A stretch of DNA of 64,000 nt from Phallusia mammillata (taxonomy: Eukaryota): contig OZ281499.1 in the NCBI GenBank assembly GCA_965637545.1, positions 14,384,001 through 14,448,000 of the forward strand, read 5' to 3'. Below, piece after piece: positions 284 to 47,958 of this stretch (position 1 is the first letter of the stretch; every line of letters begins with the position of its first letter). A model generated the notes under the pieces. It ran no database searches. It was not told where the DNA came from and was given only the letters and a program-made list of their open reading frames with translations. The translations under genes and the position numbers were made by a program.

Positions 284-865
<582 letters not shown>

Positions 866-5175: not shown

Positions 5176-5477
5176 GCTGCTGCTCACTGAATTTCTTTCG
5201 AAAGGAAACGAACTGAGCGGCTCTCCGGCCACCGCGGGCATTTATAGGCGCTCCATGCAAATGAGGCGTCCGTCCTCCCGACGAGCGGCGCTCCCGGGAG
5301 CAAAAGGAAACAATGGCCCCTTGTGGTCGAGTCGTGATCCGAGCGTGATCGGAGTGCGAGAGAATTTCGACAAAGGCGAGAGCTATAAAAGGAGAAGGGC
5401 GGCGAGTGGCAGGCATTCGACCTTGTTTGGTTTGTCATTCGCTCAGCTAAGCAGGCAAACAATCAGCAGTCAGCAAT
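5176..5477. promoter_or_regulatory. Bidirectional H2B/H2A promoter
   Basis: TATAAA on the minus strand at 5241-5246, octamer ATGCAAAT at 5255-5262, TATAAAA on the plus strand at 5384-5390. Blocks GGAAACAAT and TGCGAGAGAATTTCGACAAAGGC are shared with array B promoters. Confidence 0.8.
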
Positions 5478-5501
5478 ATGTCAGGACGTGGTAAAGGTGG
5501 C
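5478..5501 (+). pseudogene. H2A: 5' fragment of the H2A gene interrupted by the retrotransposon
   Basis: ATG TCA GGA CGT GGT AAA GGT GGC behind an intact H2A promoter, then diverges. Confidence 0.93.
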
Positions 5502-5704
5502 AAAGGATTGGGAAATTAGTCTGATTTCTGCCGGAAAGCTTTAACACAGGGTCGGAAGAGACCCTGTTTTGGATTTACTTATTGGATTTATTCACTGCTC
5601 TCATTGGATTTTGGATTATCCTTAAAGATCTGTGACGCACCACAAACTAAAAGTGGGCGTGGTTACCCCGCCCTTTAAGGTCGTGGGTCATCATTGTTTA
5701 CAAC

Positions 5705-7084
5705 ATGGAGGATGCCCCTGCAGGCTCCTCCATCGGTCTCCATGAGCAACAGGCCACGGGCGGCTCTGCTCCTGAGGCATCGACGCAATGTTCTTCTGCT
5801 GTCAGTACAAGACAGGGAACGCTCCCTAGGGGAGGACCCCCCGCTGCAAAGCGTGGATGGAATAGAGTTGTCAGCGGAGGCACTACAGGGCCCACTGCAT
5901 CCTTTTCACGGGAAACGGAGGTGATGGTTAAATTTCCCGCCAAGAAAACACGGGGGCTCATTTACAAATGGTTAGAGAAGATTAAGTTTCCTCTCCAATC
6001 AATAGAAGGCATTGTCGAAAGGTTTAATGGCCTTACCGACATTACCTGTACATCGAAGGAGAAAGCGAGAGCACTCGCTGAAAGATTGAATACCTTAAAG
6101 GAAGTTGAATATGCCAAACTTCATGATCCGGAATTTACAGACGTCATAATAGAGCATATACCGAATAGGCTTGAATGGGAGCCGATCCTATACCAACTAG
6201 AGCGACGACACGGAGAAGTACGGAAATATTATAAATTGCGGGATCCGCAATACAGAAAATTTAATGGCAAAAGAATCTTCGAGGTGAGAACGAGCGACCT
6301 GAAGGAAAACCCGATACCGAAGAATGTAAGAGTAAGCGGTCTCAAATTCGTAGTGCACTATGACAATCAACCCATCCAGTGTTTTCTTTGTCGAAAGTTT
6401 GGTCACAGAGACCGTGATTGTCCTCAAGAGGATATTGACGTAGAAGATTTTCCTTCTCTGAATATCACCCCTAAAGAAAGCAAACGCAATCACAGTCGCC
6501 ATGCCACTGTAATCAACGCGGTGGCTAACGCAAAGGCCGTCAAAGAGGCATATGAAGAATTGAAGAGAACGGCTGCAATTGCAGATCCGCAAAGCAGTAC
6601 AACGAAAGATTCACTCGATACCAGCGAAGGGGACCCCGTTCCCCCCTCACAGGATGCAACGGATACACCACCTAATGAGGCCCAGGAGGAGGAGGTCCAC
6701 TGCGACTCCTCAACATTAATCACCGATTCCAGCGGCGAAGCAGGGGACGGAGAGGAGACTTCGGAGGAGGAGAAGGAGGAGACCTCGGAGGGAAACGGCT
6801 TTACAAAGGTCAGCAGAAAGAGGCGAGGGAGGTCTACTCCCTCCCCTAACAATAACATTAAGAAAAAGTTGCAAAAAATATCCAAGTGCCCGTGTGGGCG
6901 CTTTGTGGGAGAACCAGGTCCGGGCTTGCAGAAGGTCTGCGAGGGCTGTTCCGCAATCACTTTTGGTTGTGCTTGCGGTTCAGTTCTCGCAGTCCAACCC
7001 GGACATACAACAACTTGCCCAAAGTGCGAGAGGACTTACCATCCTCATACGCACCACGCTAGTGACCCGGGTGGTCAAACGTAA
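5705..7084 (+). CDS. Retrotransposon ORF1 (gag-like nucleic-acid-binding protein)
   Basis: 459 aa; CX2CX4HX4C knuckle CFLCRKFGHRDRDC (6380-6421), acidic linker, basic patch RKRRGR, C-terminal 8-Cys domain. Confidence 0.9.
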   Translation: MEDAPAGSSIGLHEQQATGGSAPEASTQCSSAVSTRQGTLPRGGPPAAKRGWNRVVSGGTTGPTASFSRETEVMVKFPAKKTRGLIYKWLEKIKFPLQSIEGIVERFNGLTDITCTSKEKARALAERLNTLKEVEYAKLHDPEFTDVIIEHIPNRLEWEPILYQLERRHGEVRKYYKLRDPQYRKFNGKRIFEVRTSDLKENPIPKNVRVSGLKFVVHYDNQPIQCFLCRKFGHRDRDCPQEDIDVEDFPSLNITPKESKRNHSRHATVINAVANAKAVKEAYEELKRTAAIADPQSSTTKDSLDTSEGDPVPPSQDATDTPPNEAQEEEVHCDSSTLITDSSGEAGDGEETSEEEKEETSEGNGFTKVSRKRRGRSTPSPNNNIKKKLQKISKCPCGRFVGEPGPGLQKVCEGCSAITFGCACGSVLAVQPGHTTTCPKCERTYHPHTHHASDPGGQT

Positions 7085-7132
7085 TCTATATTATCTTTGC
7101 ATCCTTTTATTTACACTGCCTAATTTTTTTTA

Positions 7133-10100
7133 ATGGCTGACTACCTTAAAATAACAACCCTCAACTGCCGAGGACTCGCGGATGACGCCAGGAGACTGGC
7201 CGTCTTCGAGAGTCTTCGGCAGTTGGAAGTCCATGTCGTCCTCCTGCAAGAGACTCACTCGAGAATCGAACAGGAGGAGACATGGACTCGTCAATTTGGG
7301 CCTTCCAGAGCCTTGTTCTATTCAAATCAAAATAACAAAAGTGTGGCGAGCAATGGAGTCGCAATTTTACTAATTCACCCGTCTCTCTCTTTTGTGTCGC
7401 ATCACGGGGATCGGGACGGGAGGGTTGTGGTTGCCGATATTAAAATATTTACTCAATACGTACACGTCATAAACGTGTACGCCCCGGAAAAAGATATTAA
7501 AGCTGCAATTAGAAAATCATTTTTTGAAAATTTGTATCCATTCGTAACCTCCAATCACCCAATTATACTCGCAGGCGATTTTAATGGGGTTGAACAACCC
7601 GGTTTAGACCGTTTTCCCCCCTCTAAACGCAACAATACGGCAATGGTTCCTTTGAGGCAACTCTGCCATGACTTTCAGCTTTCCGACACTTTTCGTTCCT
7701 TGCACGGAAACAAGCACATTTTTACGCGGCGACAAGGAAATTCGCAATCTCGTTTAGATCGCTTTTATGTAAATAATTCGATACAACCAATTCACGAAAA
7801 AACCCAAAATTTTTCTCTTTCGGACCACGACGCGGTGATCCTCACTGTCCAAATTGGGCCTCTGCCCCAGCGAGGATCACCGCCATGGAAAAATAATGTC
7901 GCCGCGTACGATGAGCACTTCCAGGAGGAGCTCTCGAACAGATGGCCTCGGTGGCTAACACTGGAGGAACATTTGTTCGAGAACGCTCCTTCCTGGTGGA
8001 TGCTCATCAAACAAAAAATTAAATCATTAAATATACAAAATTCGAAACGTCTAGCTAAATTACAAAAACAAGAACAAAAGGACCTGGAACGAAAAGTGTT
8101 GGAATTGTGGGAAGGCATGGCAGAGAATCCTTCCCTACTTCCCCAATATTATACCCTTAAAAAACAATTGGCCACCCTTCTTCGCAATAGGGCGAAGAAG
8201 AAAATTACTAGGGACCGACTTTTAAGTTTTGAACAAGGAGATAGGGGAACCAAAGAATTTTTTCAACGCTTTGCCCAGAATCGCCAAAGGACTTTGATCG
8301 AAAGCCTGGTTGACGATTCTGGGCAAGCAAACTCCGACATCCCATTTATTTTGGAAAAAACCGCAAAATTTTACGAAAACCTTTTTTCGGCCAGTAATGT
8401 AAATGAGCCCATCCAAGAACAATTCTTAAATAATATACATCCCAAATTTAGCGAGAACGCATGTTTGGCATTAACCGAAATAATTAGTAAAGAAGAAATT
8501 GAACGCGCTCTCGCCACGTTTAAAGCTGGGAAATCTCCCGGACCCGATGGTCTCTCCTTTGAATTTTATAAACTCAATTGGGGAACCATCGGGACAAAAT
8601 TTACTGAAATTATTAATTGCATCCATAACGGTCAAATTCCCTCAAATTTTAACGATGGGCTCATTACACTTATCCACAAAAAAAACGACAAGGACCAATT
8701 AGGTAACTACAGACCTATCTCCTTGCTCAATTCTGACCTAAAAATATATTCTAAAATCCTTTCCCTTCGCCTCAAGGCCATTTTACCGGATGTTGTTCAA
8801 CCCCATCAATTTGCAACACCCGGCAAAAAAATATCGGAAGCCACAACCCTCTTACGGGACCTTTTGCATGAGGCCCAAAGGAGAGAGCTTAATTACTACT
8901 TTATTTCGCTAGACTTTAAAAAAGCATTCGACTCCATTGCCCACACTTGGCTCTGGAAGGTCCTGTCTAAACTGGGCTTTCCTCAACAATACATTAACAA
9001 TATTAAAAACTTGTACAGGGAGGGCAGCTCGAAGATTCTCGTCAATGGCTTTTCCACCAGAAGCGTTCCCATTCGAAACGGTGTTCGTCAGGGCGACCCC
9101 CTTAGCCTGTACTTGTTCGTACTGGCTATTGAACCCCTCGCCCAAGCGTTCCAGGATGACCCCAGTGTTGAGGGAATCCGCCTACCTGGAAGGCATTTGA
9201 TTAAGTGCCCCAGCTATGCGGATGACGTCACACTGACCCTCACCCATTCTTATTCGGTAAATAAAGCTTTCCACATTCTTGACCTTTTTTATTTGGCGTC
9301 GGGCTTAAAAATTAATCCTGAAAAAACAAAAGGCATTAAGCCAAGCAACCTAAACACCTCTACCCAACTTCCCGATATCAATTGGTCTGAATCAAAATTG
9401 GATATTTTAGGAATTTCGATCGGCCCTCAAAAAACAATTCAAAACTTGTGGGAAGCAAATACCCAAAAATTAAAACAAGAAATCTCGCTCTTAAAGCGCT
9501 ACCCCTGCACCTGGAACGCCAAGTCACTCTTATCAAAAGCCAAATTATTACCACACCTATCCTATACTGCTAACCTTTATCCCCTCCCTGGCGACATCGC
9601 AGAGAAAGTGAACGCCATGGTGGAAAAGTACGTGTGCGGGAGTCGGAGAGTTGCCCTCCCGATTGAAACACTAAGCAAACCATTTGACAGAGGTGGGTAC
9701 AATGTGGCAAACATCCCTCTATACTGTGACCTGCTTTATCTTTCTAACATTTATCAATATTGTAAACATAGAGAAAACAATTTAACAACCACACCCGGTC
9801 TTGCCTTGACGGAATACAACATCGGGCATCAGCTTTCCCGTCAATTTGGCTTTCGTTTAATAAACAGCACTCCCCATGCTGATGTCCCATCACCCTTCTA
9901 CACCCATTCTCTAAAATTAATTGATAAATACAAATTAAAACTAGAAACCCTCCTCAATGGCAAGATTCGTAACCTTTATCGTTCCCTCAATTGCTCCCCT
10001 AGTGGCACCCTCCACCCGTCCCAGAGTGACCACTGGAGGAGCATTCACCACCCTATACTCTCCAATAACTTACGAACTTTAAATTACCGAATAACATGGA

Positions 10101-10546
10101 ATTGCCTTCCCCTTTCTACAAAATTTTCCCATTTCCTTCTCGACAACGACACATTGTGCCCCTTCTGTCAAAACTTCGCCGAAACAACATGGCATATTTT
10201 TGCTGAATGTTCTCAAATTCAACCGGTTTGGCGCGAGGTGCACCAACTCATCACTCGTGCCACTGGGTGCACCTCGTTAAACATTTCAATTGCTTTGATC
10301 ATCAATATGGAAATACCACCGCCCCTGGAGTACTGGTCCGACCTTTTAATTTACTTGATTTCTGTTACGAAACATAGTATTTGGATACATCGCAACAAAA
10401 TAAAATATGATAAAATACAACCCTCAACCAACAAAATTTTTTTGTCTGTTAAACAATCCATCATTCACCGACTTTTCTTTGAGAACAAACGCCGTGATAC
10501 CACTTTTTTACCAGTACTCCAGGGGCTGAGGGAAGCCCTAAGGTAG
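7133..10546 (+). CDS. Retrotransposon ORF2: APE endonuclease, reverse transcriptase, C-terminal CCHC motif
   Basis: 1137 aa. Endonuclease motifs TLNCRGL, LQETH, GDFN, SRLDRFY, SDH. RT motifs KSPGPDG, NYRPISLLN, LDFKKAFD, GVRQGDPLS, YADD. C-terminal CPFC-x8-H-x4-C. Confidence 0.97.
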   Translation: MADYLKITTLNCRGLADDARRLAVFESLRQLEVHVVLLQETHSRIEQEETWTRQFGPSRALFYSNQNNKSVASNGVAILLIHPSLSFVSHHGDRDGRVVVADIKIFTQYVHVINVYAPEKDIKAAIRKSFFENLYPFVTSNHPIILAGDFNGVEQPGLDRFPPSKRNNTAMVPLRQLCHDFQLSDTFRSLHGNKHIFTRRQGNSQSRLDRFYVNNSIQPIHEKTQNFSLSDHDAVILTVQIGPLPQRGSPPWKNNVAAYDEHFQEELSNRWPRWLTLEEHLFENAPSWWMLIKQKIKSLNIQNSKRLAKLQKQEQKDLERKVLELWEGMAENPSLLPQYYTLKKQLATLLRNRAKKKITRDRLLSFEQGDRGTKEFFQRFAQNRQRTLIESLVDDSGQANSDIPFILEKTAKFYENLFSASNVNEPIQEQFLNNIHPKFSENACLALTEIISKEEIERALATFKAGKSPGPDGLSFEFYKLNWGTIGTKFTEIINCIHNGQIPSNFNDGLITLIHKKNDKDQLGNYRPISLLNSDLKIYSKILSLRLKAILPDVVQPHQFATPGKKISEATTLLRDLLHEAQRRELNYYFISLDFKKAFDSIAHTWLWKVLSKLGFPQQYINNIKNLYREGSSKILVNGFSTRSVPIRNGVRQGDPLSLYLFVLAIEPLAQAFQDDPSVEGIRLPGRHLIKCPSYADDVTLTLTHSYSVNKAFHILDLFYLASGLKINPEKTKGIKPSNLNTSTQLPDINWSESKLDILGISIGPQKTIQNLWEANTQKLKQEISLLKRYPCTWNAKSLLSKAKLLPHLSYTANLYPLPGDIAEKVNAMVEKYVCGSRRVALPIETLSKPFDRGGYNVANIPLYCDLLYLSNIYQYCKHRENNLTTTPGLALTEYNIGHQLSRQFGFRLINSTPHADVPSPFYTHSLKLIDKYKLKLETLLNGKIRNLYRSLNCSPSGTLHPSQSDHWRSIHHPILSNNLRTLNYRITWNCLPLSTKFSHFLLDNDTLCPFCQNFAETTWHIFAECSQIQPVWREVHQLITRATGCTSLNISIALIINMEIPPPLEYWSDLLIYLISVTKHSIWIHRNKIKYDKIQPSTNKIFLSVKQSIIHRLFFENKRRDTTFLPVLQGLREALR

Positions 10547-10670
10547 TCAGCCAATTACTTGTGTTGTCATTATTTAATTTGTTTTGTTTTTCCGCTTACG
10601 TTTTTTCTTTTTCCGATTATTACTATTTCCCACTTACCCATGTCTACAATTTATATCCACTTTTACGACC

Positions 10671-10701
<31 letters not shown>

Positions 10702-11531
10702 GCAAATGCGCACAGATATATACCAAACTTTGTACTAAATGAAGGTATATAATACGCATTCAAATATATATGAATGTAACTGTCAACGGTCATTAGACAA
10801 CATTGCCCATGTTGCTTATTATGTTTATGTTTCTATCGTTTTTCTCAGTCCTTCACTTCACACCCGGTTTTCTGTTGTTTGTCCGAAAAAAAAAAATAAA
10901 AAAAATACCTACATACATTTGTGTGCATGTGTATTTATTGTGTATGTGATATGTATATATGTCCTGTTTTTGTCGTCGATGTGTTTCGTCCTTTTCTCGA
11001 GAAATATGCATAAAATGCGCATGTAGCACACATCCGCTATACATATACTTGTTGCCATAGTCACGTTACCCCCCGCTCATCGTGCTTCATCGGTCTCATC
11101 CGATATATAAATATATTTATACAGCGACCATTCTATTGGCACTTAAACTAATGACATCCTGTTCACTATCTAATATTTGTATATAATATCATTGTTAACT
11201 ACGCTCATCTCTTTATTTCTGTATTTGCGCTATTTAATAATATTAATAAATAATAATAACATAATTAGGCTCTATATTTCTTTCCTTTTTCTCTGCCATA
11301 ATTATTTGTTTTGTAAACTATTATCATTTATTGCGTACATGCTATTGCAGTGTTTCTATTATTATAATATTTTGTATGTATTTAACTCCGTTGTGTTACA
11401 TCAATTTGTCTTCGTAATATAAAAATTTGTTGTGATATACCAAATGGTGTGTTTGTAATCCAATGTGCTTTCGCAATGTATTATGTTGTTTTTCGCATGT
11501 ACGATTTTTCGGTTGTGTAATTTCTTTTTGA

Positions 11532-11912
<381 letters not shown>

Positions 11913-13238: not shown

Positions 13239-13703
<465 letters not shown>

Positions 13704-24458: not shown

Positions 24459-24658
24459 NNNNNNNNNNNNNNNNNNNNNNNNNNNNNNNNNNNNNNNNNN
24501 NNNNNNNNNNNNNNNNNNNNNNNNNNNNNNNNNNNNNNNNNNNNNNNNNNNNNNNNNNNNNNNNNNNNNNNNNNNNNNNNNNNNNNNNNNNNNNNNNNNN
24601 NNNNNNNNNNNNNNNNNNNNNNNNNNNNNNNNNNNNNNNNNNNNNNNNNNNNNNNNNN
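24459..24658. other. Assembly gap (200 N)
   Basis: N run between arrays A and B; true size, copy number and relative orientation are unresolved. Confidence 0.99.
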
Positions 24659-24791: not shown

Positions 24792-25151
24792 ATGGCAGCC
24801 AGCAAAGGAACTAAGAAGGCAGTGAAGAAGGCCGCGCCGGCCGACAAGACCAAAAAGCGCCGAAAGCGCAGACGCGAGACCTTCAGCATCTACATTTACA
24901 AGGTTCTGAAGCAGGTACACCCAGACACCGGCATCTCAAGCAAAGCGATGAACATCATGAACTCGTTCGTCAACGACGTGTTCGAGCGCATTGCTGGCGA
25001 AGCTTCCCGCCTGTCGCTCTACAACAAGCGACGGACTATTAGCAGCCGCGAGATCCAGACCTCAGTCCGTCTGCTCCTGCCCGGCGAATTGGCCAAGCAC
25101 GCAGTGTCCGAAGGCACCAAGGCCGTTACCAAGTACACCAGCTCCAAGTAA
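24792..25151 (+). CDS. H2B: Histone H2B type B-a
   Basis: 119 aa; KAMNIMN, NKRRT. Confidence 0.97.
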
Positions 25152-26502
25152 GCACCAAAGCAAGCGCCGCGGGGGGCTTCATCACCCGAGCGAGGTCATC
25201 GCCGCCCTTGCCCCAAAAAACGGCTCTTTTCAGAGCCACCCGATCGTTCAAAGAGAGAATTGCAACGGCCGAAAGGCGGCCTGGTTAAAGTCATTTGCCG
25301 ATTTCTTGCCGTTGTAGTTTTTCCTCGTTTTGGTCCCAGCCAATTCACCACGAAACACCGAAAAATGTATTTGCCCACACTAAAGCGCCACTAGCCTACT
25401 GACTGGCCCGCGGGAAAGCGCCCTTTGCGTGTTTTTTTTTCTCTGCCGACGTTTAGGCCAATGATTCGTCTGCTTTTCCGCGCCCGCCAAAAATAACAAA
25501 TAAATACACCAATAAATGCTCCACAGCAGCCAGAGAAATACCAAAATCACAAGCAAAACTAGAGCGCTGCCAGCTTGTGCTACTCGAAAAACTCGAAAAG
25601 TTCCACCCGCCGATCTACGATCCTTCCACCACCGGACCGCAACTGAAAAACAACCCGACGGGAAAGGCCCCGGACCGCGAAGGATTTTGCAACAAATTCA
25701 TTAATACTTACATAATTAACTGGCGCTAATGCTAATCAATTTGTAAAAGTCACACAATTTTTTGCTCGCCGCAAAGCCGAGATGCAGGCTCTCAAACATT
25801 CACTCATAACGTAAACTGTTTCTAGTCTTGTGTGTTGGTAATCCCCTGTGGTGTGAAAACATAATAAATGGAACCCACTGATCTGTGAAGGAGCGACGAG
25901 CCAAAGTAAAAACCAAACTCGCATTCCGCTTCGCTTTCAGGCCGCTCACTGACCTGCCTAGCTTGCCCCCTGCTGCGCAGGCGCCCTGTCCGACCTGTAC
26001 TAACCCCCAGGCTTGGCGGTCCCAACAGTTCACCCCACACGACAGCAGCGGACGGCGCCGGGTGTCACGACCTCCGGGGCGCTTCGGCTCCACTTTTGTG
26101 ACAAACCAGGCTTGCCGTGAACAAACCTGTTTGGGCCCGCAGCCGGATTTAGGCCACGCGCACACTCGACTAGGCGTCTCACACAGCTCAACGCCTCGCT
26201 CTGATGCCCCCCGTGGAGCACGCCGGCGCGGTGCGGGTCGCTAATTGCGCTGGCGTGCGACCTGAGCGTCGCACTGCACCACAGGGCACAAGCCGATGCC
26301 GAGCGACCTGGGGCCTCACTGGGGCAGGCCCGCGTTTAGGCGATTCAAGCACAAACTGCAAGTTTCACCCGCACCCGTCGGCGAGCCTTCCAAAACGTCG
26401 TTTCGCGTTAGTGCGGCCAGGCCATACAAATAGGCGTCGACGCCGCTTGCCCGGCAAACTTCATTTTGTTCTGTCAGTCAACCAGTCAGAAGCAACGACA
26501 CT

Positions 26503-27105
26503 ATGTCCGACTCAAAGAGCGCAGGAAAGAAGCAGGCCAGCAAAAAGGCAGTCGCGCCCAAGGCGCACCCCACCTACCAGGTGATGATCAACGCTGCCAT
26601 TACGCAGCTAAAGGACAGGAGTGGCTCGTCGCGCCAGGCGATCGCCAAGTACATCAAGGCCAACTACAAGGTGGGTGACGGGGCTGACCACCACATCAGG
26701 CAGGCGCTGCGTCGTCTTTCCTCAAAGGGTCAGTTGTTAAACACCAGGGGTAGCAAGGGTGCGTCCGGCTCCTTCAAGCTCGTGAAACCGCAGGCCGGCG
26801 AGGGCAAGAAGAAGAAGCCCAAGGCAGCCGCAAAGAAGGCGGATAAGCCCAAGCAGGCCGCAGCCAAAAAGCCCGCCGCCAAGAAGGATGCAAAGAAGTC
26901 CCCCAAAAAGAAACCGGCGGCCAAACAAACGGCCACCAAGAAGGCGGCGGCAGGCAAGAAGTCGTCACCCAAGAAGGCGGTCAAGCAAGCGAAAAAGACC
27001 CCGGCGGCAAAGAAATCACCCAAGAAGACTGCTGTGAAGTCGAAAAAACCGGCGGCCAAGAAGCAGGCTAAAAAGCCTGCCGCCAAAAAGGCAACCAAGA
27101 AGTAG
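26503..27105 (+). CDS. H1: Histone H1 type B (200 aa)
   Basis: Globular domain plus K/A/P tail; differs from type A. Confidence 0.97.
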   Translation: MSDSKSAGKKQASKKAVAPKAHPTYQVMINAAITQLKDRSGSSRQAIAKYIKANYKVGDGADHHIRQALRRLSSKGQLLNTRGSKGASGSFKLVKPQAGEGKKKKPKAAAKKADKPKQAAAKKPAAKKDAKKSPKKKPAAKQTATKKAAAGKKSSPKKAVKQAKKTPAAKKSPKKTAVKSKKPAAKKQAKKPAAKKATKK

Positions 27106-27352
27106 AGCGGAGCGGCGTAGAGATCCCCGCTCAACACAAACGGCTCTTTTCAGGGCCACCCACACTTTCGCAAAGAGAAAATGAAGTTTTCGCGCGCAAG
27201 CCGCACTAAGCCCTTTTAACTGTTCCGACCAGTTAACAAGCATTGTGCTCTAGTGCGCCGAATGCGGACATGTTGCACATACTTGCTTCGCTGATATTCG
27301 TTTTGGCACTATATAACTGGGAGGCGCGCAGAATGCGGCACAGTCGCTTTAG

Positions 27353-27694
<342 letters not shown>

Positions 27695-27991
27695 GCACCT
27701 TCCAATCATCGGCAACGGCAGCAACAAAATCGGCCCTTTTCAGGGCCACTCATACTTATCGGGAGAGAATTTGTAAGGGCCGAGTGGCTCGGGCCTCGTG
27801 TTGATTAGCCGGCAACGAGCGGCGATAGATGTTATTTTTGCGCCAATAAAAAAATCCCTCGTTTCGCGGCCGCTTTGCCGATGCGGCGAGATCAAAGGTC
27901 TGATTGGTCGAGTTGAATTTTCGCAAACCAATAGGCGTGAGTCCACGAAGGTATATAACGCGGACCGAACACTGCCGGTTCATCAGTCTGA

Positions 27992-28459
<468 letters not shown>

Positions 28460-28760
28460 ATAGGGGCATCGGCGCAATCAACAACACAAACGGCTCTTTT
28501 CAGAGCCACCTAAATGCCAGTGAAAGAGATACTTGACTTGTATTTGTCCGCAGTAAGGTGGGCGAACGGTAATTTCGTTGCTCGCGTCGGGCAATAGGAG
28601 TAAAAAAACGAACAGACAGGGCCGCTGAAGCGCAAGCGGATATATGAAAGCAACCAGGGTGCGGGCACAGCACGTCAAACTCTTTTGCGAAAAATCGAGT
28701 GGCTCTGAAAAGAGCCGTTTCTGTTTTGCATCACGTACGAGACGAGACAGGGGCGTCGAT

Positions 28761-29189
<429 letters not shown>

Positions 29190-29473
29190 TCAAATGCCTG
29201 CAAAATGCGTCTGTTCGCTTTTATAGCTCGTGCCTTTGTCGAAATTCTCTCGCATTTCCGTCACGTGCGAATAAAACTCGACCACCGTCGCTCGTACAGC
29301 TATTGTTTCCTTGTTGCTCTCAGAGGCGCCGCGTCTGAGGAGGTTTGATGTTTCATTTACATACGAGTGTTTATAAAATCGGGCGGTGGCGGGAAAAGCG
29401 TCCAGTTCGTTATTTTAACGTTGAGTTTTAGCACAGCTCGCCGTCGGACAAGACAAACCTAAGGCAAGACAGC

Positions 29474-29833
29474 ATGGCAGCCAGCAAAGGAACTAAAAAA
29501 GCCGTGAAGAAGGCCGCACCGGCCGACAAGACCAAGAAGCGCCGAAAGCGCAGACACGAGACCTTCAGCATCTACATTTACAAGGTTCTGAAGCAAGTGC
29601 ACCCGGACACCGGTATCTCAAGCAAAGCGATGGGCATCATGAACTCGTTCGTCAACGACGTGTTCGAGCGCATTGCCGCCGAGGCCTCACGACTGTCGCT
29701 CTACAACAAACGATCGACCATCAGCAGCCGCGAGATCCAGACCTCAGTCCGTCTGCTCCTGCCCGGCGAATTGGCCAAGCACGCAGTGTCCGAAGGCACC
29801 AAAGCCGTGACCAAATACACCAGCTCCAAGTAA
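29474..29833 (+). CDS. H2B: Histone H2B type B-b
   Basis: 119 aa; RRHETF, KAMGIMN, IAAEAS. Confidence 0.97.
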
Positions 29834-30289
29834 GCGCGGCGCGGGGCTTGATCGAAAACGGCTCTTTTCAGAGCCACCTCAGTACTTAAAAAGGGAATTG
29901 CGACGGCCGAAACGGCTGTTTTGGACCGTGCTACAGTTTTGGCGAATGTCAAGTTGCTAAAAACCGCTTTGCTGCTGCTGGTGTGTTGGCCTTTTGTCCC
30001 AAAAGCATCGAACAATTTCGGTACCCATAGTTCATAAAATTTCGATTGGTGCAGAGTTTTATTTTTAGCCTGACCGAAAAATTAAAGGATGACGCCAAAT
30101 TTATGTAAAAATCGTTGAAATGTCTGGAATTGGGGATATTATATCGAATGTACCCTATTTCTTTTTCTTGTGCAATTCATGGGCGTCGCGAAATGCGAAG
30201 GGGCGGGGATAAACTCTTTTGCGAATAAAGAAGGTGGCTCTGAAAAGAGCCGTTTTTGCTTCGCGCCACGTACTTGGCCGGGCGCCGAT

Positions 30290-30691
<402 letters not shown>

Positions 30692-30989
30692 TTACTGACA
30701 CACAACAAATCGACTGAATGCCCGCGAGTAACGGATCTTCGCTCTTATAGCTCATGCCCTTGTCGAAATTCTCTCGCATTTCCGTCACGTGCGAATGAAA
30801 TTCGACCACAGTCGCTCCTACAGTTATTGTTTCCTTCATGCTCTTGAGGAGCGTCGCCTCTTAAGAGATTTGACGCTTTATTTGCATGCAAATGTTTATA
30901 AAACCGAGCGGTGGCGGGAAATGCGTTTAGTTCGTTATTTTGACCTTCAGTACCAGCAGTGATCGTAGGCTAAACTGAGGCAGCACAGC

Positions 30990-31349
30990 ATGGCAGCCAG
31001 CAAAGGAACTAAGAAGGCAGTGAAGAAGGCCGCGCCGGCCGACAAGACCAAAAAGCGCCGAAAGCGCAGACGCGAGACCTTCAGCATCTACATTTACAAG
31101 GTTCTGAAGCAGGTACACCCAGACACCGGCATCTCAAGCAAAGCGATGAACATCATGAACTCGTTCGTCAACGACGTGTTCGAGCGCATTGCTGGCGAAG
31201 CTTCCCGCCTGTCGCTCTACAACAAGCGACGGACTATTAGCAGCCGCGAGATCCAGACCTCAGTCCGTCTGCTCCTGCCCGGCGAATTGGCCAAGCACGC
31301 AGTGTCCGAAGGCACCAAGGCCGTTACCAAGTACACCAGCTCCAAGTAA
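30990..31349 (+). CDS. H2B: Histone H2B type B-a
   Basis: Repeat copy. Confidence 0.97.
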
Positions 31350-32700
31350 GCACCAAAGCAAGCGCCGCGGGGGGCTTCATCACCCGAGCGAGGTCATCGC
31401 CGCCCTTGCCCCAAAAAACGGCTCTTTTCAGAGCCACCCGATCGTTCAAAGAGAGAATTGCAACGGCCGAAAGGCGGCCTGGTTAAAGTCATTTGCCGAT
31501 TTCTTGCCGTTGTAGTTTTTCCTCGTTTTGGTCCCAGCCAATTCACCACGAAACACCGAAAAATGTATTTGCCCACACTAAAGCGCCACTAGCCTACTGA
31601 CTGGCCCGCGGGAAAGCGCCCTTTGCGTGTTTTTTTTTCTCTGCCGACGTTTAGGCCAATGATTCGTCTGCTTTTCCGCGCCCGCCAAAAATAACAAATA
31701 AATACACCAATAAATGCTCCACAGCAGCCAGAGAAATACCAAAATCACAAGCAAAACTAGAGCGCTGCCAGCTTGTGCTACTCGAAAAACTCGAAAAGTT
31801 CCACCCGCCGATCTACGATCCTTCCACCACCGGACCGCAACTGAAAAACAACCCGACGGGAAAGGCCCCGGACCGCGAAGGATTTTGCAACAAATTCATT
31901 AATACTTACATAATTAACTGGCGCTAATGCTAATCAATTTGTAAAAGTCACACAATTTTTTGCTCGCCGCAAAGCCGAGATGCAGGCTCTCAAACATTCA
32001 CTCATAACGTAAACTGTTTCTAGTCTTGTGTGTTGGTAATCCCCTGTGGTGTGAAAACATAATAAATGGAACCCACTGATCTGTGAAGGAGCGACGAGCC
32101 AAAGTAAAAACCAAACTCGCATTCCGCTTCGCTTTCAGGCCGCTCACTGACCTGCCTAGCTTGCCCCCTGCTGCGCAGGCGCCCTGTCCGACCTGTACTA
32201 ACCCCCAGGCTTGGCGGTCCCAACAGTTCACCCCACACGACAGCAGCGGACGGCGCCGGGTGTCACGACCTCCGGGGCGCTTCGGCTCCACTTTTGTGAC
32301 AAACCAGGCTTGCCGTGAACAAACCTGTTTGGGCCCGCAGCCGGATTTAGGCCACGCGCACACTCGACTAGGCGTCTCACACAGCTCAACGCCTCGCTCT
32401 GATGCCCCCCGTGGAGCACGCCGGCGCGGTGCGGGTCGCTAATTGCGCTGGCGTGCGACCTGAGCGTCGCACTGCACCACAGGGCACAAGCCGATGCCGA
32501 GCGACCTGGGGCCTCACTGGGGCAGGCCCGCGTTTAGGCGATTCAAGCACAAACTGCAAGTTTCACCCGCACCCGTCGGCGAGCCTTCCAAAACGTCGTT
32601 TCGCGTTAGTGCGGCCAGGCCATACAAATAGGCGTCGACGCCGCTTGCCCGGCAAACTTCATTTTGTTCTGTCAGTCAACCAGTCAGAAGCAACGACACT

Positions 32701-33303
32701 ATGTCCGACTCAAAGAGCGCAGGAAAGAAGCAGGCCAGCAAAAAGGCAGTCGCGCCCAAGGCGCACCCCACCTACCAGGTGATGATCAACGCTGCCATTA
32801 CGCAGCTAAAGGACAGGAGTGGCTCGTCGCGCCAGGCGATCGCCAAGTACATCAAGGCCAACTACAAGGTGGGTGACGGGGCCGACCACCACATCAGGCA
32901 GGCGCTGCGTCGTCTTTCCTCAAAGGGTCAGTTGTTAAACACCAGGGGTAGCAAGGGTGCGTCCGGCTCCTTCAAGCTCGTGAAACCGCAGGCCGGCGAG
33001 GGCAAGAAGAAGAAGCCCAAGGCAGCCGCAAAGAAGGCGGATAAGCCCAAGCAGGCCGCAGCCAAAAAGCCCGCCGCCAAGAAGGATGCAAAGAAGTCCC
33101 CCAAAAAGAAACCGGCGGCCAAACAAACGGCCACCAAGAAGGCGGCGGCAGGCAAGAAGTCGTCACCCAAGAAGGCGGTCAAGCAAGCGAAAAAGACCCC
33201 GGCGGCAAAGAAATCACCCAAGAAGACTGCTGTGAAGTCGAAAAAACCGGCGGCCAAGAAGCAGGCTAAAAAGCCTGCCGCCAAAAAGGCAACCAAGAAG
33301 TAG
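32701..33303 (+). CDS. H1: Histone H1 type B
   Basis: Repeat copy. Confidence 0.97.
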   Translation: MSDSKSAGKKQASKKAVAPKAHPTYQVMINAAITQLKDRSGSSRQAIAKYIKANYKVGDGADHHIRQALRRLSSKGQLLNTRGSKGASGSFKLVKPQAGEGKKKKPKAAAKKADKPKQAAAKKPAAKKDAKKSPKKKPAAKQTATKKAAAGKKSSPKKAVKQAKKTPAAKKSPKKTAVKSKKPAAKKQAKKPAAKKATKK

Positions 33304-33550
33304 AGCGGAGCGGCGTAGAGATCCCCGCTCAACACAAACGGCTCTTTTCAGGGCCACCCACACTTTCGCAAAGAGAAAATGAAGTTTTCGCGCGCAAGCC
33401 GCACTAAGCCCTTTTAACTGTTCCGACCAGTTAACAAGCATTGTGCTCTAGTGCGCCGAATGCGGACATGTTGCACATACTTGCTTCGCTGATATTCGTT
33501 TTGGCACTATATAACTGGGAGGCGCGCAGAATGCGGCACAGTCGCTTTAG

Positions 33551-33892
<342 letters not shown>

Positions 33893-34189
33893 GCACCTTC
33901 CAATCATCGGCAACGGCAGCAACAAAATCGGCCCTTTTCAGGGCCACTCATACTTATCGGGAGAGAATTTGTAAGGGCCGAGTGGCTCGGGCCTCGTGTT
34001 GATTAGCCGGCAACGAGCGGCGATAGATGTTATTTTTGCGCCAATAAAAAAATCCCTCGTTTCGCGGCCGCTTTGCCGATGCGGCGAGATCAAAGGTCTG
34101 ATTGGTCGAGTTGAATTTTCGCAAACCAATAGGCGTGAGTCCACGAAGGTATATAACGCGGACCGAACACTGCCGGTTCATCAGTCTGA

Positions 34190-34657
<468 letters not shown>

Positions 34658-34958
34658 ATAGGGGCATCGGCGCAATCAACAACACAAACGGCTCTTTTCA
34701 GAGCCACCTAAATGCCAGTGAAAGAGATACTTGACTTGTATTTGTCCGCAGTAAGGTGGGCGAACGGTAATTTCGTTGCTCGCGTCGGGCAATAGGAGTA
34801 AAAAAACGAACAGACAGGGCCGCTGAAGCGCAAGCGGATATATGAAAGCAACCAGGGTGCGGGCACAGCACGTCAAACTCTTTTGCGAAAAATCGAGTGG
34901 CTCTGAAAAGAGCCGTTTCTGTTTTGCATCACGTACGAGACGAGACAGGGGCGTCGAT

Positions 34959-35387
<429 letters not shown>

Positions 35388-35671
35388 TCAAATGCCTGCA
35401 AAATGCGTCTGTTCGCTTTTATAGCTCGTGCCTTTGTCGAAATTCTCTCGCATTTCCGTCACGTGCGAATAAAACTCGACCACCGTCGCTCGTACAGCTA
35501 TTGTTTCCTTGTTGCTCTCAGAGGCGCCGCGTCTGAGGAGGTTTGATGTTTCATTTACATACGAGTGTTTATAAAATCGGGCGGTGGCGGGAAAAGCGTC
35601 CAGTTCGTTATTTTAACGTTGAGTTTTAGCACAGCTCGCCGTCGGACAAGACAAACCTAAGGCAAGACAGC

Positions 35672-36031
35672 ATGGCAGCCAGCAAAGGAACTAAAAAAGC
35701 CGTGAAGAAGGCCGCACCGGCCGACAAGACCAAGAAGCGCCGAAAGCGCAGACACGAGACCTTCAGCATCTACATTTACAAGGTTCTGAAGCAAGTGCAC
35801 CCGGACACCGGTATCTCAAGCAAAGCGATGGGCATCATGAACTCGTTCGTCAACGACGTGTTCGAGCGCATTGCCGCCGAGGCCTCACGACTGTCGCTCT
35901 ACAACAAACGATCGACCATCAGCAGCCGCGAGATCCAGACCTCAGTCCGTCTGCTCCTGCCCGGCGAATTGGCCAAGCACGCAGTGTCCGAAGGCACCAA
36001 AGCCGTGACCAAATACACCAGCTCCAAGTAA
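35672..36031 (+). CDS. H2B: Histone H2B type B-b
   Basis: Repeat copy. Confidence 0.97.
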
Positions 36032-36487
36032 GCGCGGCGCGGGGCTTGATCGAAAACGGCTCTTTTCAGAGCCACCTCAGTACTTAAAAAGGGAATTGCG
36101 ACGGCCGAAACGGCTGTTTTGGACCGTGCTACAGTTTTGGCGAATGTCAAGTTGCTAAAAACCGCTTTGCTGCTGCTGGTGTGTTGGCCTTTTGTCCCAA
36201 AAGCATCGAACAATTTCGGTACCCATAGTTCATAAAATTTCGATTGGTGCAGAGTTTTATTTTTAGCCTGACCGAAAAATTAAAGGATGACGCCAAATTT
36301 ATGTAAAAATCGTTGAAATGTCTGGAATTGGGGATATTATATCGAATGTACCCTATTTCTTTTTCTTGTGCAATTCATGGGCGTCGCGAAATGCGAAGGG
36401 GCGGGGATAAACTCTTTTGCGAATAAAGAAGGTGGCTCTGAAAAGAGCCGTTTTTGCTTCGCGCCACGTACTTGGCCGGGCGCCGAT

Positions 36488-36889
<402 letters not shown>

Positions 36890-37187
36890 TTACTGACACA
36901 CAACAAATCGACTGAATGCCCGCGAGTAACGGATCTTCGCTCTTATAGCTCATGCCCTTGTCGAAATTCTCTCGCATTTCCGTCACGTGCGAATGAAATT
37001 CGACCACAGTCGCTCCTACAGTTATTGTTTCCTTCATGCTCTTGAGGAGCGTCGCCTCTTAAGAGATTTGACGCTTTATTTGCATGCAAATGTTTATAAA
37101 ACCGAGCGGTGGCGGGAAATGCGTTTAGTTCGTTATTTTGACCTTCAGTACCAGCAGTGATCGTAGGCTAAACTGAGGCAGCACAGC

Positions 37188-37547
37188 ATGGCAGCCAGCA
37201 AAGGAACTAAGAAGGCAGTGAAGAAGGCCGCGCCGGCCGACAAGACCAAAAAGCGCCGAAAGCGCAGACGCGAGACCTTCAGCATCTACATTTACAAGGT
37301 TCTGAAGCAGGTACACCCAGACACCGGCATCTCAAGCAAAGCGATGAACATCATGAACTCGTTCGTCAACGACGTGTTCGAGCGCATTGCTGGCGAAGCT
37401 TCCCGCCTGTCGCTCTACAACAAGCGACGGACTATTAGCAGCCGCGAGATCCAGACCTCAGTCCGTCTGCTCCTGCCCGGCGAATTGGCCAAGCACGCAG
37501 TGTCCGAAGGCACCAAGGCCGTTACCAAGTACACCAGCTCCAAGTAA
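37188..37547 (+). CDS. H2B: Histone H2B type B-a
   Basis: Repeat copy. Confidence 0.97.
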
Positions 37548-38898
37548 GCACCAAAGCAAGCGCCGCGGGGGGCTTCATCACCCGAGCGAGGTCATTGCCG
37601 CCCTTGCCCCAAAAAACGGCTCTTTTCAGAGCCACCCGATCGTTCAAAGAGAGAATTGCAACGGCCGAAAGGCGGCCTGGTTAAAGTCATTTGCCGATTT
37701 CTTGCCGTTGTAGTTTTTCCTCGTTTTGGTCCCAGCCAATTCACCACGAAACACCGAAAAATGTATTTGCCCACACTAAAGCGCCACTAGCCTACTGACT
37801 GGCCCGCGGGAAAGCGCCCTTTGCGTGTTTTTTTTTCTCTGCCGACGTTTAGGCCAATGATTCGTCTGCTTTTCCGCGCCCGCCAAAAATAACAAATAAA
37901 TACACCAATAAATGCTCCACAGCAGCCAGAGAAATACCAAAATCACAAGCAAAACTAGAGCGCTGCCAGCTTGTGCTACTCGAAAAACTCGAAAAGTTCC
38001 ACCCGCCGATCTACGATCCTTCCACCACCGGACCGCAACTGAAAAACAACCCGACGGGAAAGGCCCCGGACCGCGAAGGATTTTGCAACAAATTCATTAA
38101 TACTTACATAATTAACTGGCGCTAATGCTAATCAATTTGTAAAAGTCACACAATTTTTTGCTCGCCGCAAAGCCGAGATGCAGGCTCTCAAACATTCACT
38201 CATAACGTAAACTGTTTCTAGTCTTGTGTGTTGGTAATCCCCTGTGGTGTGAAAACATAATAAATGGAACCCACTGATCTGTGAAGGAGCGACGAGCCAA
38301 AGTAAAAACCAAACTCGCATTCCGCTTCGCTTTCAGGCCGCTCACTGACCTGCCTAGCTTGCCCCCTGCTGCGCAGGCGCCCTGTCCGACCTGTACTAAC
38401 CCCCAGGCTTGGCGGTCCCAACAGTTCACCCCACACGACAGCAGCGGACGGCGCCGGGTGTCACGACCTCCGGGGCGCTTCGGCTCCACTTTTGTGACAA
38501 ACCAGGCTTGCCGTGAACAAACCTGTTTGGGCCCGCAGCCGGATTTAGGCCACGCGCACACTCGACTAGGCGTCTCACACAGCTCAACGCCTCGCTCTGA
38601 TGCCCCCCGTGGAGCACGCCGGCGCGGTGCGGGTCGCTAATTGCGCTGGCGTGCGACCTGAGCGTCGCACTGCACCACAGGGCACAAGCCGATGCCGAGC
38701 GACCTGGGGCCTCACTGGGGCAGGCCCGCGTTTAGGCGATTCAAGCACAAACTGCAAGTTTCACCCGCACCCGTCGGCGAGCCTTCCAAAACGTCGTTTC
38801 GCGTTAGTGCGGCCAGGCCATACAAATAGGCGTCGACGCCGCTTGCCCGGCAAACTTCATTTTGTTCTGTCAGTCAACCAGTCAGAAGCAACGACACT

Positions 38899-39501
38899 AT
38901 GTCCGACTCAAAGAGCGCAGGAAAGAAGCAGGCCAGCAAAAAGGCAGTCGCGCCCAAGGCGCACCCCACCTACCAGGTGATGATCAACGCTGCCATTACG
39001 CAGCTAAAGGACAGGAGTGGCTCGTCGCGCCAGGCGATCGCCAAGTACATCAAGGCCAACTACAAGGTGGGTGACGGGGCCGACCACCACATCAGGCAGG
39101 CGCTGCGTCGTCTTTCCTCAAAGGGTCAGTTGTTAAACACCAGGGGTAGCAAGGGTGCGTCCGGCTCCTTCAAGCTCGTGAAACCGCAGGCCGGCGAGGG
39201 CAAGAAGAAGAAGCCCAAGGCAGCCGCAAAGAAGGCGGATAAGCCCAAGCAGGCCGCAGCCAAAAAGCCCGCCGCCAAGAAGGATGCAAAGAAGTCCCCC
39301 AAAAAGAAACCGGCGGCCAAACAAACGGCCACCAAGAAGGCGGCGGCAGGCAAGAAGTCGTCACCCAAGAAGGCGGTCAAGCAAGCGAAAAAGACCCCGG
39401 CGGCAAAGAAATCACCCAAGAAGACTGCTGTGAAGTCGAAAAAACCGGCGGCCAAGAAGCAGGCTAAAAAGCCTGCCGCCAAAAAGGCAACCAAGAAGTA
39501 G
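38899..39501 (+). CDS. H1: Histone H1 type B
   Basis: Repeat copy. Confidence 0.97.
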   Translation: MSDSKSAGKKQASKKAVAPKAHPTYQVMINAAITQLKDRSGSSRQAIAKYIKANYKVGDGADHHIRQALRRLSSKGQLLNTRGSKGASGSFKLVKPQAGEGKKKKPKAAAKKADKPKQAAAKKPAAKKDAKKSPKKKPAAKQTATKKAAAGKKSSPKKAVKQAKKTPAAKKSPKKTAVKSKKPAAKKQAKKPAAKKATKK

Positions 39502-39748
39502 AGCGGAGCGGCGTAGAGATCCCCGCTCAACACAAACGGCTCTTTTCAGGGCCACCCACACTTTCGCAAAGAGAAAATGAAGTTTTCGCGCGCAAGCCGC
39601 ACTAAGCCCTTTTAACTGTTCCGACCAGTTAACAAGCATTGTGCTCTAGTGCGCCGAATGCGGACATGTTGCACATACTTGCTTCGCTGATATTCGTTTT
39701 GGCACTATATAACTGGGAGGCGCGCAGAATGCGGCACAGTCGCTTTAG

Positions 39749-40090
<342 letters not shown>

Positions 40091-40387
40091 GCACCTTCCA
40101 ATCATCGGCAACGGCAGCAACAAAATCGGCCCTTTTCAGGGCCACTCATACTTATCGGGAGAGAATTTGTAAGGGCCGAGTGGCTCGGGCCTCGTGTTGA
40201 TTAGCCGGCAACGAGCGGCGATAGATGTTATTTTTGCGCCAATAAAAAAATCCCTCGTTTCGCGGCCGCTTTGCCGATGCGGCGAGATCAAAGGTCTGAT
40301 TGGTCGAGTTGAATTTTCGCAAACCAATAGGCGTGAGTCCACGAAGGTATATAACGCGGACCGAACACTGCCGGTTCATCAGTCTGA

Positions 40388-40855
<468 letters not shown>

Positions 40856-41156: not shown

Positions 41157-41585
<429 letters not shown>

Positions 41586-42685: not shown

Positions 42686-43087
<402 letters not shown>

Positions 43088-46700: not shown

Positions 46701-47883
46701 TTTATCTGACTCTAATAATTAAACTATCGCTACCTAAACAAACAACAAGACGCAAAGCTAAATTAACGTTCCCACATTATATTTTAATAAGGCATACCAC
46801 GAAATCTTGCGGCTAAACACGCAACACAAAAGTCACCGCGCCAAGAATCAACTGTGAGATATCAATTCCAATGCGTACTCTAGTCACTCTGGTCACTCTT
46901 ATGATAACTCTAGATGACTCTAGATAACTGATTTTAAGTCTAAAATACGTCTATATTTATAGCGTTCAGGTCATATCTCGTTATCACCGGCATAGTCGTA
47001 AAACGTACGCCCGAGAAGATTAACTGTGTTCTAAACCGTAATTATACTTTAAATCGCTTATAGAATTGTCAAGTGTAACATGGCTGGAAGCAGTTTAAGA
47101 CATTGCTTCACGTTAACACGTAAGGGGACGATAAAACGATAGCCTTAAGCAGTAATTGACCGATGCATTAATAAGTAAAACAGGTTTCAACAGTTTTAAC
47201 AGCCGGTCAAGCTTTTGTGTAGAAAAAGGCGAGTTATGAACGGGGTTGACCGTGATGATATGACACGACAATTACACGAATTAAAATGTTTTGAATTAAA
47301 AAGTCCAAAGTCCGATACACCTGAAAAAGAACTCTTTTTAAACAATTATAGATACATGGGCGACATTTTATGTTTGTTAAATACAAAAAAAAACAGGCAT
47401 TACAAATACCATTGATGAGTCAAAAACTGGCTTGCTGTGTATGTTACAATCATTTTGTAACTTGCCCTGTATATGTGTACTGCTGACGGGTGTAATATGT
47501 ATTGAAGTCATCAGTCAGGAGTTTAATCTAAACACTGTTACTATCATTCAGCAGCTTGTAAATTATAAATTGCTGATTGTGACCGAGCTGCCTTTTTTAT
47601 GCATTGTCCTGGTAAGTTTGGCTTTACCCTCTTGTGTTTCTAAACCTGTAAATGTTTGCCTCTTGTGCAGTATTTGTTCGGCGTTTTATAGACGCATTTA
47701 ATGTCAAACCCCTGTGGCCAAACAGTTGGGTATCTGGTGTCCCGGTTTTTCGCTAGCGTCATTGTGTGACGCTCGGGTGAATGAAAGCGTTACACTTGGT
47801 TACATTTCTTGTTGCTGTTGTCTATTTTCACATACTCTGTTGTGTTGTTCATATTCTGCCGATGACATTTTGTCAATAAACAA

Positions 47884-47958
47884 ATTGAAAGGGAGGCACA
47901 CGAAGGTGCTGCGTGGCAATATTCAAGGCGTCACAAACCCATAGCGATCAGGCGTCTT
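47884..47958 (+). pseudogene. Decayed histone H4 fragment (about codons 10-37) fused to a retrotransposon-like 3' end
   Basis: gaaagggaggcacacgaaggtgctgcgtggcaatattcaaggcgtcacaaacccatagcgatcaggcgtctt aligns to H4 [21 protein letters not shown] with indels. Confidence 0.85.

What the first reader, a model, noticed from the sequence alone, without database searches (positions are those of the whole stretch)
5493..5519. H4-specific sequence at the 5' junction of an element inserted in H2A
Seen: after H2A codons 1-8 (H2A-type CGT GGT), the sequence reads AAAGGATTGGGAAA (5502-5515), which is H4 (K-G-L-G-K codons) and not H2A (GGTAAGTCC). Positions 5493-5515 are a 23/23 match to the H4 genes. Inference: the donor copy sat in an H4 gene, was co-transcribed with upstream H4 sequence, and its cDNA joined H2A through the shared AAAGGTGGC homology, as R2 carries upstream 28S sequence. 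The apparent 6-bp TSD may therefore be microhomology, and the native H4 TSD could be up to 20 bp (GGTGGCAAAGGATTGGGAAA). This would be a captured H4-to-H2A jump.
Basis: partly seen in the sequence, partly recalled or inferred. Interest (0 to 1): 0.85.

Follow-up and report, generated by a model that had tools for sequence, protein, structure and literature searches.

The report
Retrotransposon hopping between histone gene starts
A jumping gene sitting in a sea-squirt histone H2A gene starts with 14 letters of the histone H4 gene, a sign that its family normally lives in histone gene starts, borrows their on-switch and uses the carried piece to join new sites, a lifestyle known for ribosomal-RNA parasites but not, in the papers I could search, for protein-coding genes.

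Summary
Observation confirmed. An intact 6,037-bp L1/Tx1-like element (5516-11552) splits an H2A gene. Inside the GGTGGC duplication it carries 14 nt identical to H4 nt 25-38; 5493-5515 matches all seven H4 genes 23/23. In three runs from separate studies the element contig starts exactly at 5493, at bulk depth in the two DNA-like runs. By simulation this means the H4 piece is family-wide, not an assembly slip, not a 14-nt end at unrelated sites, and has at least two upstream flanks, one most likely H4. The element's first bases stop the histone frame after one codon. Three related families in other tunicates (H3, H2B, H3) do the same, and spliced-leader-headed relatives carry their home-gene head inside 21-22-bp duplications. 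Best reading (0.72): R2-like co-transcription from a histone promoter, with the H4 head annealing to the near-identical H2A start. Not shown: an H4 donor with both junctions, the true duplication length, or that this copy is the primary jump. The scan noted histone-targeting families earlier elsewhere in this genome. I found no paper on them; Repbase was not searchable.

The parts
5478..5501 (+). H2A codons 1-8 (5' stub of the interrupted H2A gene, promoter upstream intact); 22/24 identical to H4 codons 1-8
   Evidence: upstream 4,500 nt differ by 1 base from an intact unit
5493..5501 (+). 9 nt identical in H2A and H4; the switch from H2A to H4 sequence lies here; includes the left GGTGGC copy (5496-5501)
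5502..5515 (+). H4-specific 14-nt head (H4 nt 25-38), inside the duplication
   Evidence: present in contigs of X1, X3, X7
5517..5519 (+). In-frame TAG that ends the histone reading frame (13-codon u[16 protein letters not shown])
5516..5704 (+). Element 5' UTR, no ATG; holds a 12-nt match (5634-5645) to the H4 cap-site region
5705..7084 (+). ORF1, 459 aa, CCHC knuckle at aa 226-239 and ZCCHC3/RRM-like features
7133..10546 (+). ORF2, 1137 aa, APE endonuclease + RT + zf-RVT, catalytic motifs intact
10547..11552 (+). Long 3' UTR with an internal A27 (10675-10701), ending in a small hairpin and AATAAACAAAAAT, the family-type 3' end
   Evidence: the part after the A27 is also covered in runs X6 and X7
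11553..11558 (+). Right GGTGGC copy; H2A resumes
11553..11912 (+). Remainder of the H2A gene; the next 4,946 nt match an intact unit except one 2-nt indel
13239..13582 (-). An intact type-1 H4 gene with its leader (inferred home-site type; other copies at 2502, 18543, 23536 on - and type 2 at 27383, 33581, 39779 on +)
47863..47958 (+). Relic: sister-family 3' end (hairpin + AATAAACAAAT) fused to a decayed H4 fragment (82% over 66 nt)

Best explanation
The element belongs to a tunicate lineage of L1/Tx1-like LINEs that insert in sense at the starts of multicopy Pol II genes (histone genes, spliced-leader genes) and are transcribed from the host promoter. This family's home site is H4, with the 5' junction after H4 nt 38. 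Its RNA begins with the H4 leader and 38 coding bases; the element's first bases make a stop, leaving a 13-codon uORF before ORF1. ORF2p nicked the look-alike site AAA|GGTGGC in H2A and reverse-transcribed from there. The H4 head of the cDNA then annealed to the upstream H2A end (22/24 identical), any non-matching H2A overhang was lost, and second-strand synthesis fixed 14 H4-only bases inside the duplication. Shown: anatomy, H4 identity, family-wide 23-mer in reads, at least two upstream flanks, in-frame stops and carried heads in relatives. Inferred: H4-inserted donors, co-transcription, annealing, nick positions, a native duplication of 6+14=20 bp. The jump may have made this copy or an ancestor of it.
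For: 23/23 H4 match ending at the element's first base. Element contigs of X1, X3, X7 start at 5493; depth 1813 against 1750-2067 in ORF1 for X1, and one 3,022-nt contig in X3. Simulation: 5493 needs two or more flanks differing at 5492; H2A only gives 5472, one H4 type 5486, unrelated sites 5502. Loose ends before the ATG are H4 leaders in all three runs; in X7 the leader is 33 nt, about the predicted cap site. X6 and X7 hold the element with little or no histone DNA, unlike X1 and X3, so they look like RNA. In-frame stop one codon after the histone piece in four families: window, Clavelina H3 and H2B (L002), and L091, which carries H3 leader-like sequence plus 9 codons with no other histone gene in the 6.4 kb upstream; chance 0.05-0.13 each. 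Spliced-leader-gene heads inside 22-bp (L005) and 21-bp (L006) duplications. All fall in one RT clade, 99/96. R2 precedent: PMC3774820.
Against: No contig is listed that shows H4 leader and element in one record; the link rests on graph logic. Two H2A-type flanks (T and A at 5492) would give the same start. The 3' junction lay outside the 6,000 letters laid, so no H4-side 3' junction was seen. RNA status of X6 and X7 is a guess, and the human filter can drop histone contigs. The relic's 3' flank seems to begin near H4 nt 31-35, which would mean a short duplication, though it is decayed and from a sister family. All seven H4 genes in the window are empty.
Confidence: 0.72

Rival explanations
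1. Inherited chimeric head. The family now lives mainly in H2A genes (two H2A types). The 14 H4 bases were captured once in an ancestor and are re-copied each cycle from H2A-promoter co-transcripts, as aberrant R2 junctions are propagated. Same mechanism, but no living H4 donor is needed and this copy is an H2A-to-H2A jump.
For: H2A1 plus H2A2a flanks also start the contig at 5493. PMC3774820 describes propagation of junction variants. Unchecked notes report worn H4 heads on sister families.
Against: Upstream loose ends in X7 are H4 leader, with no H2A2a leader listed; H2A contigs of X3 run through 5501 unbroken. The 14-mer has no difference from present H4 genes, and it ends where a sister relic abuts H4.
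Confidence: 0.15
2. DNA-level transfer. An H4-inserted copy was moved into H2A by ectopic gene conversion or break repair, using 22/24 homology on the left and GGTGGC on the right, with no RNA step.
For: Histone arrays recombine often (own knowledge). The H2A copy at 488 and its neighbourhood are rearranged.
Against: Needs a 6-kb copy resolved by 6 bp exactly at the element's 3' end. It does not explain carried heads at foreign sites in relatives (L005, L006, L091), which need an RNA step.
Confidence: 0.06
3. One-off template jump. At this insertion the reverse transcriptase ran off the element's 5' end onto H4 mRNA or DNA and copied a few bases.
For: Template jumps at 5' junctions are known for LINEs (noted for R2 in PMC3774820); histone mRNA is abundant.
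Against: The 23-mer is on essentially all full-length copies in three samples, and the element's first bases stop the H4 frame.
Confidence: 0.04
4. Assembly chimera: an H4-inserted element mis-joined to H2A flanks in a collapsed array.
For: The H2A-side 5' join and the 3' join are not displayed in the laid contigs; the array units are nearly identical.
Against: Needs two mis-joins at 9-bp and 6-bp homologies. Both flanks continue the H2A unit for over 4 kb. X7 has a record that runs over the left end, with no loose part listed, as expected for an H2A-promoter flank (inference).
Confidence: 0.03

Closest known systems
R2 (28S rDNA-specific non-LTR retrotransposon)
   Same: Co-transcription with a multicopy host gene; upstream host bases left on the RNA anneal to the target and give uniform 5' junctions; junction variants propagate (PMC3774820, PMC6795142).
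   Different: R2 has one ORF, a restriction-like endonuclease, Pol I transcription and an HDV-like ribozyme. Here: two ORFs, APE endonuclease, Pol II protein-coding host, no Rfam ribozyme hit, host ATG closed by an in-frame stop, and hopping between paralogous genes.
Target-specific Tx1-clade families (Tx1L, Keno in U2, Mutsu in 5S, Kibi, Koshi, Tx1-Mar)
   Same: APE-RT ORF2, CCHC ORF1, insertion into repeated sequences (PMC4494074).
   Different: Listed targets are RNA genes, microsatellites, satellites and transposons; histone genes are not mentioned in PMC4494074, PMC4640811 or PMC8869645. Placement in Tx1 rather than L1 was not settled.
Mammalian LINE-1
   Same: Best solved-structure match, E 2.5e-68 over residues 4-880; 5' transduction from upstream promoters occurs (own knowledge).
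   Different: L1 has an internal promoter, a poly(A) tail, a coiled-coil ORF1 and dispersed insertion; here a defined end, a CCHC ORF1 and a host-gene head.
HeT-A of Drosophila telomeres
   Same: Uses a promoter lying upstream of its own 5' end (PMC5537684).
   Different: The promoter comes from the neighbouring element, not a host gene; no endonuclease targeting of genes.
NeSL, CRE and SLACS (spliced-leader-gene elements)
   Same: Sister tunicate families here carry spliced-leader-gene heads; SL exons are a listed target class.
   Different: Those are restriction-like-endonuclease elements (own knowledge); these are APE-type.

Membership tests
L1 group of non-LTR retrotransposons (L1 + Tx1) | ORF2 with N-terminal APE endonuclease, RT and C-terminal Cys/His motif | tested here: met
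   PF03372, PF00078, PF13966; motifs intact
L1 group of non-LTR retrotransposons (L1 + Tx1) | RT closest to L1-type RTs | tested here: met
   Human L1 ORF2p E 2.5e-68 against R2 1e-27
L1 group of non-LTR retrotransposons (L1 + Tx1) | Two ORFs and a target-site duplication | tested here: met
   ORF1 and ORF2; GGTGGC at both ends, origin of the left copy ambiguous
Tx1 clade | RT groups with Tx1L, Keno, Kibi and Koshi in a tree | tested here: inconclusive
   The tree gives a tunicate clade (99/96) apart from vertebrate hits, but no labelled Tx1 reference was available from the tools
Tx1 clade | ORF1 with CCHC knuckle and RRM-like domain | tested here: met
   Knuckle at aa 226 (below Pfam cut-off); Atlas hits zf-CCHC/ZCCHC3-RBD at 0.90-0.93
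Tx1 clade | Preference for a repeated target sequence | tested here: met
   Essentially all full-length copies follow the same 23-mer; endonuclease specificity itself not assayed
R2 clade | Single ORF with restriction-like endonuclease | tested here: not met
   Two ORFs, APE endonuclease
R2 clade | Insertion in 28S rDNA | tested here: not met
   Inserted in H2A
R2 clade | 5' HDV-like ribozyme | tested here: not met
   No Rfam hit at gathering score; 5' region folds no better than shuffles, z -0.8; a divergent ribozyme is not excluded
R2-like working mode | RNA begins in upstream host sequence (co-transcription) | tested here: inconclusive
   H4 leader contig and element start at 5493 in RNA-like run X7; contigs cannot show RNA starts
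R2-like working mode | Uniform 5' junctions with carried host bases | tested here: met
   Same junction at bulk depth in three runs; carried heads in L005, L006, L091
R2-like working mode | cDNA head anneals to target to prime the second strand | not testable with these tools
   Needs an integration assay

The most novel reading that the evidence does not exclude
Tunicates host a lineage of APE-type LINEs whose standing niche is the 5' end of replication-dependent histone genes. They have no promoter of their own, take S-phase-timed transcription from the histone promoter, silence the host ATG with an evolved in-frame stop, and change target gene (H4, H2A, H3, H2B, and spliced-leader genes) by head-guided annealing. 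This junction is a direct record of one such switch between paralogous genes, and shows how target specificity can move.
Probability: 0.6. Interest if true: 0.82.

Novelty: new variant of a known kind. Interest (0 to 1): 0.7.

Why it matters
Target-specific LINEs are described from rRNA, snRNA, tRNA and spliced-leader genes, microsatellites, telomeres and other transposons. Multicopy protein-coding genes are missing from that list in the papers I could search. A histone niche would tie retrotransposon expression to S phase and raises new questions: how a histone-promoter transcript becomes polyadenylated, and how ORF1 is translated behind a histone ATG. Because H2A and H4 starts differ at only two of 24 bases, the junction works as a natural marker experiment for the open second-strand step of APE-type LINE integration: it maps the switch from target to RNA-derived sequence to 9 bases. 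It also offers a testable route by which target specificity shifts between genes, and an intact, apparently expressed, low-copy element to test it with.

Tried and rejected
Chance match: rejected. One-off template jump: disfavoured, head is family-wide. Free 14-nt terminus at unrelated sites, or tandem copies behind a 14- or 20-bp footprint in these samples: would start contigs at 5502 or 5496, not seen. A27 at 10675 as the true 3' end with an 850-bp transduction: rejected, because the end at 11552 is shared by relatives and the later part is in the RNA-like runs. Ribozyme at the 5' end: no Rfam hit. Monophyly of histone-associated families: not shown, 2 changes on the tree, weak inner branches (L091 was recognised as H3-headed only afterwards, its cluster P0019 lies next to the window at weak support). 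Most of the 80 metagenome loci had no histone sequence. Seven paper searches found nothing on histone-targeting LINEs; two reviews and the Tx1L paper were not held; Repbase could not be searched. The N gap at 24459-24658 was not filled.

Full report
Setting. The window holds two tandem histone arrays (a 4,993-bp unit up to the N gap at 24459-24658 and a 6,198-bp unit after it). One H2A copy (ATG 5478) is split by an intact element at 5516-11552 with ORF1 (459 aa, CCHC knuckle) and ORF2 (1137 aa, APE endonuclease, RT, zf-RVT). The best solved match is human L1 ORF2p. The nearest named relatives are from the ascidians Phallusia and Clavelina at 35-45% identity, so the host is inferred to be an ascidian; an unchecked note names Phallusia mammillata.

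Positions 5478-5501 equal H2A codons 1-8, with the H2A-type bases at 5489 and 5492. Positions 5502-5515 equal H4 nt 25-38, and 5493-5515 match all seven H4 genes 23/23, ending exactly at the element's first base. The 14-mer occurs only at the seven H4 genes and here; 0.06 matches are expected. At the other end the element stops at AATAAACAAAAAT and H2A resumes with GGTGGC. That end, not the internal A27, is the family 3' end: relatives end the same way. Both flanks are nearly identical to an intact unit for over 4 kb, so the insertion is young or homogenised.

Read evidence. I laid contigs of four runs from four studies on 5400-11399. In X1, X3 and X7 the first element contig begins at 5493, with no extra letters. 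Its depth in X1 (1813) equals that of ORF1 (1750-2067). Contig overlaps of 30 bases show 31-letter words. A simulation built from window pieces gives the start expected for each case: only this H2A flank 5472; one H4 type 5486; a 14-nt head at unrelated sites 5502; no head 5516; two or more histone flanks differing at 5492, 5493. So the join between the H4 piece and the element is real, is on essentially all full-length copies, and is preceded by at least two histone-start variants. The loose ends before the ATG are H4 leaders in all three runs; the X3 consensus is exactly the merge of the two H4 leader types. X7 and X6 hold the element with little or no histone sequence, whereas X3 has the H2A promoter at about 20 times the element's depth, so X6 and X7 look like RNA and the element looks expressed. 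The X7 leader is 33 nt, about the predicted H4 cap site. Limits: no listed record shows leader and element together; a pair of H2A-type flanks would give the same start; depth is not copy number (diverged variants at 250-400 in X1 suggest roughly 6-9 near-identical copies, a rough inference); the 3' junction was outside the stretch.

Relatives. In Clavelina lepadiformis (L002) one relative has its 5' junction in H3 after codon 15, and another family breaks H2B and leaves a 12-14-bp H2B footprint between tandem copies. A copy of the H3 family among ordinary genes still begins with the last 7 H3-matching bases (L087). In another sample, L091 begins with leader-like sequence and H3 codons 1-9, with no other histone gene in the 6.4 kb upstream. 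Other relatives begin with a spliced-leader gene piece at varied sites; in L005 the head lies inside a 22-bp duplication and in L006 inside a 21-bp one. All share one RT clade (99/96), but histone and spliced-leader families are not resolved as separate clades. In all four histone cases the host frame is stopped one codon after the host piece: GLGN-stop here, GGKC-stop, KAVN-stop and TARL-stop. The chance is 0.05-0.13 each; leaving out the first case, where I noticed it, about 6e-4 for the other three together. The 5' UTR here has no ATG. This is what an element transcribed from a histone promoter needs.

Mechanism. Most likely the family's home is H4, with the 5' junction after nt 38. Transcription from the H4 promoter gives an RNA with the H4 leader and 38 coding bases. 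ORF2p nicks the look-alike AAA|GGTGGC in H2A, primes there, and copies the RNA through its H4 head. The head anneals to the upstream H2A end (22/24 identical) and second-strand synthesis starts within 5493-5501, fixing 14 H4-only bases. This is the model proposed for R2 elements whose RNA keeps upstream 28S bases (PMC3774820). A 14-bp or shorter native duplication remains open (Clavelina H2B footprint; relic at 47863). Whether GGTGGC on the left is target DNA or RNA-derived cannot be told. Once in H2A the copy would make chimeric-head RNA able to land in either gene, so this copy may descend from the jump rather than be it.

Comparison and novelty. It works like R2 but is not R2 (two ORFs, APE endonuclease, no rDNA, no ribozyme hit). 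It is an L1-group element; Tx1 membership is likely but untested against references. Tx1 targets listed in PMC4494074, PMC4640811 and PMC8869645 do not include histone genes, and seven searches found no report; Repbase and two reviews were out of reach, so a prior brief report is possible. The scan has already noted histone-start-targeting families and H4 leaders on sister elements elsewhere in this genome; these are unchecked notes and I do not count them as support. What this work adds is read-level evidence that the head is family-wide, the shared in-frame stop, and cases from other species.

Verdict. Real feature; new variant of a known kind (target-specific, host-promoter-dependent LINE in a new target class). 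Interest 0.70; best explanation 0.72.

Noticed in passing
window 457-485 (-), 1-487: Another element's 5' end on the minus strand begins with the H4 mRNA leader (27/29), starting at the predicted cap site, and abuts the H2A ATG at 488; no DNA match to the element studied here.
   Followed up: partly
window 47863-47958: Relic of a sister family's 3' end (hairpin + AATAAACAAAT) fused to a decayed H4 fragment about 4 kb outside the array.
   Followed up: partly
window 5634-5645: 12-nt exact match in the element's 5' UTR to the type-1 H4 cap-site region; 2.6% by chance against all 11 histone promoters, 0.04% against H4 alone. Possibly an older captured head or an initiator mimic.
   Followed up: partly
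window 5535-5560: An 8-bp perfect hairpin near the element's 5' end, stable in the centroid fold; not a Histone3 Rfam hit.
   Followed up: no
window 488-865: This H2A copy differs from the array's H2A at 5 synonymous-looking sites within nt 36-103 only, suggesting local conversion or a hybrid gene.
   Followed up: no
window 24792-43911: The second array has two different H2A genes per 6,198-bp unit and a gene order unlike the first array.
   Followed up: no
L002 1-15486 (Clavelina lepadiformis): Histone cluster with at least four related elements: one ending in H2B, one starting in H3, and tandem copies with an H2B footprint at 12410.
   Followed up: partly
L003, L004, L005, L006, L007, L011, L031, L058, L073, L089, L090, L092: APE-type relatives that begin with an unspliced spliced-leader gene piece (exon plus donor site) at unrelated sites; L005 has the head twice, inside a 22-bp duplication.
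   Followed up: partly
L091 6370-6445: Element with H3 leader-like sequence and codons 1-9, then a stop, with no histone cluster upstream; its 3' end is not in the contig.
   Followed up: partly
window 11533-11552: The element's 3' end contains an ATG in frame with the H2A remainder, giving a 125-aa ORF (MSINKN start, 11535-11912); probably a by-product of the conserved end hairpin.
   Followed up: no
window 54273-55142 (+) and 60976-61674 (-): ORFs of 289 and 232 aa with no Pfam hit.
   Followed up: no
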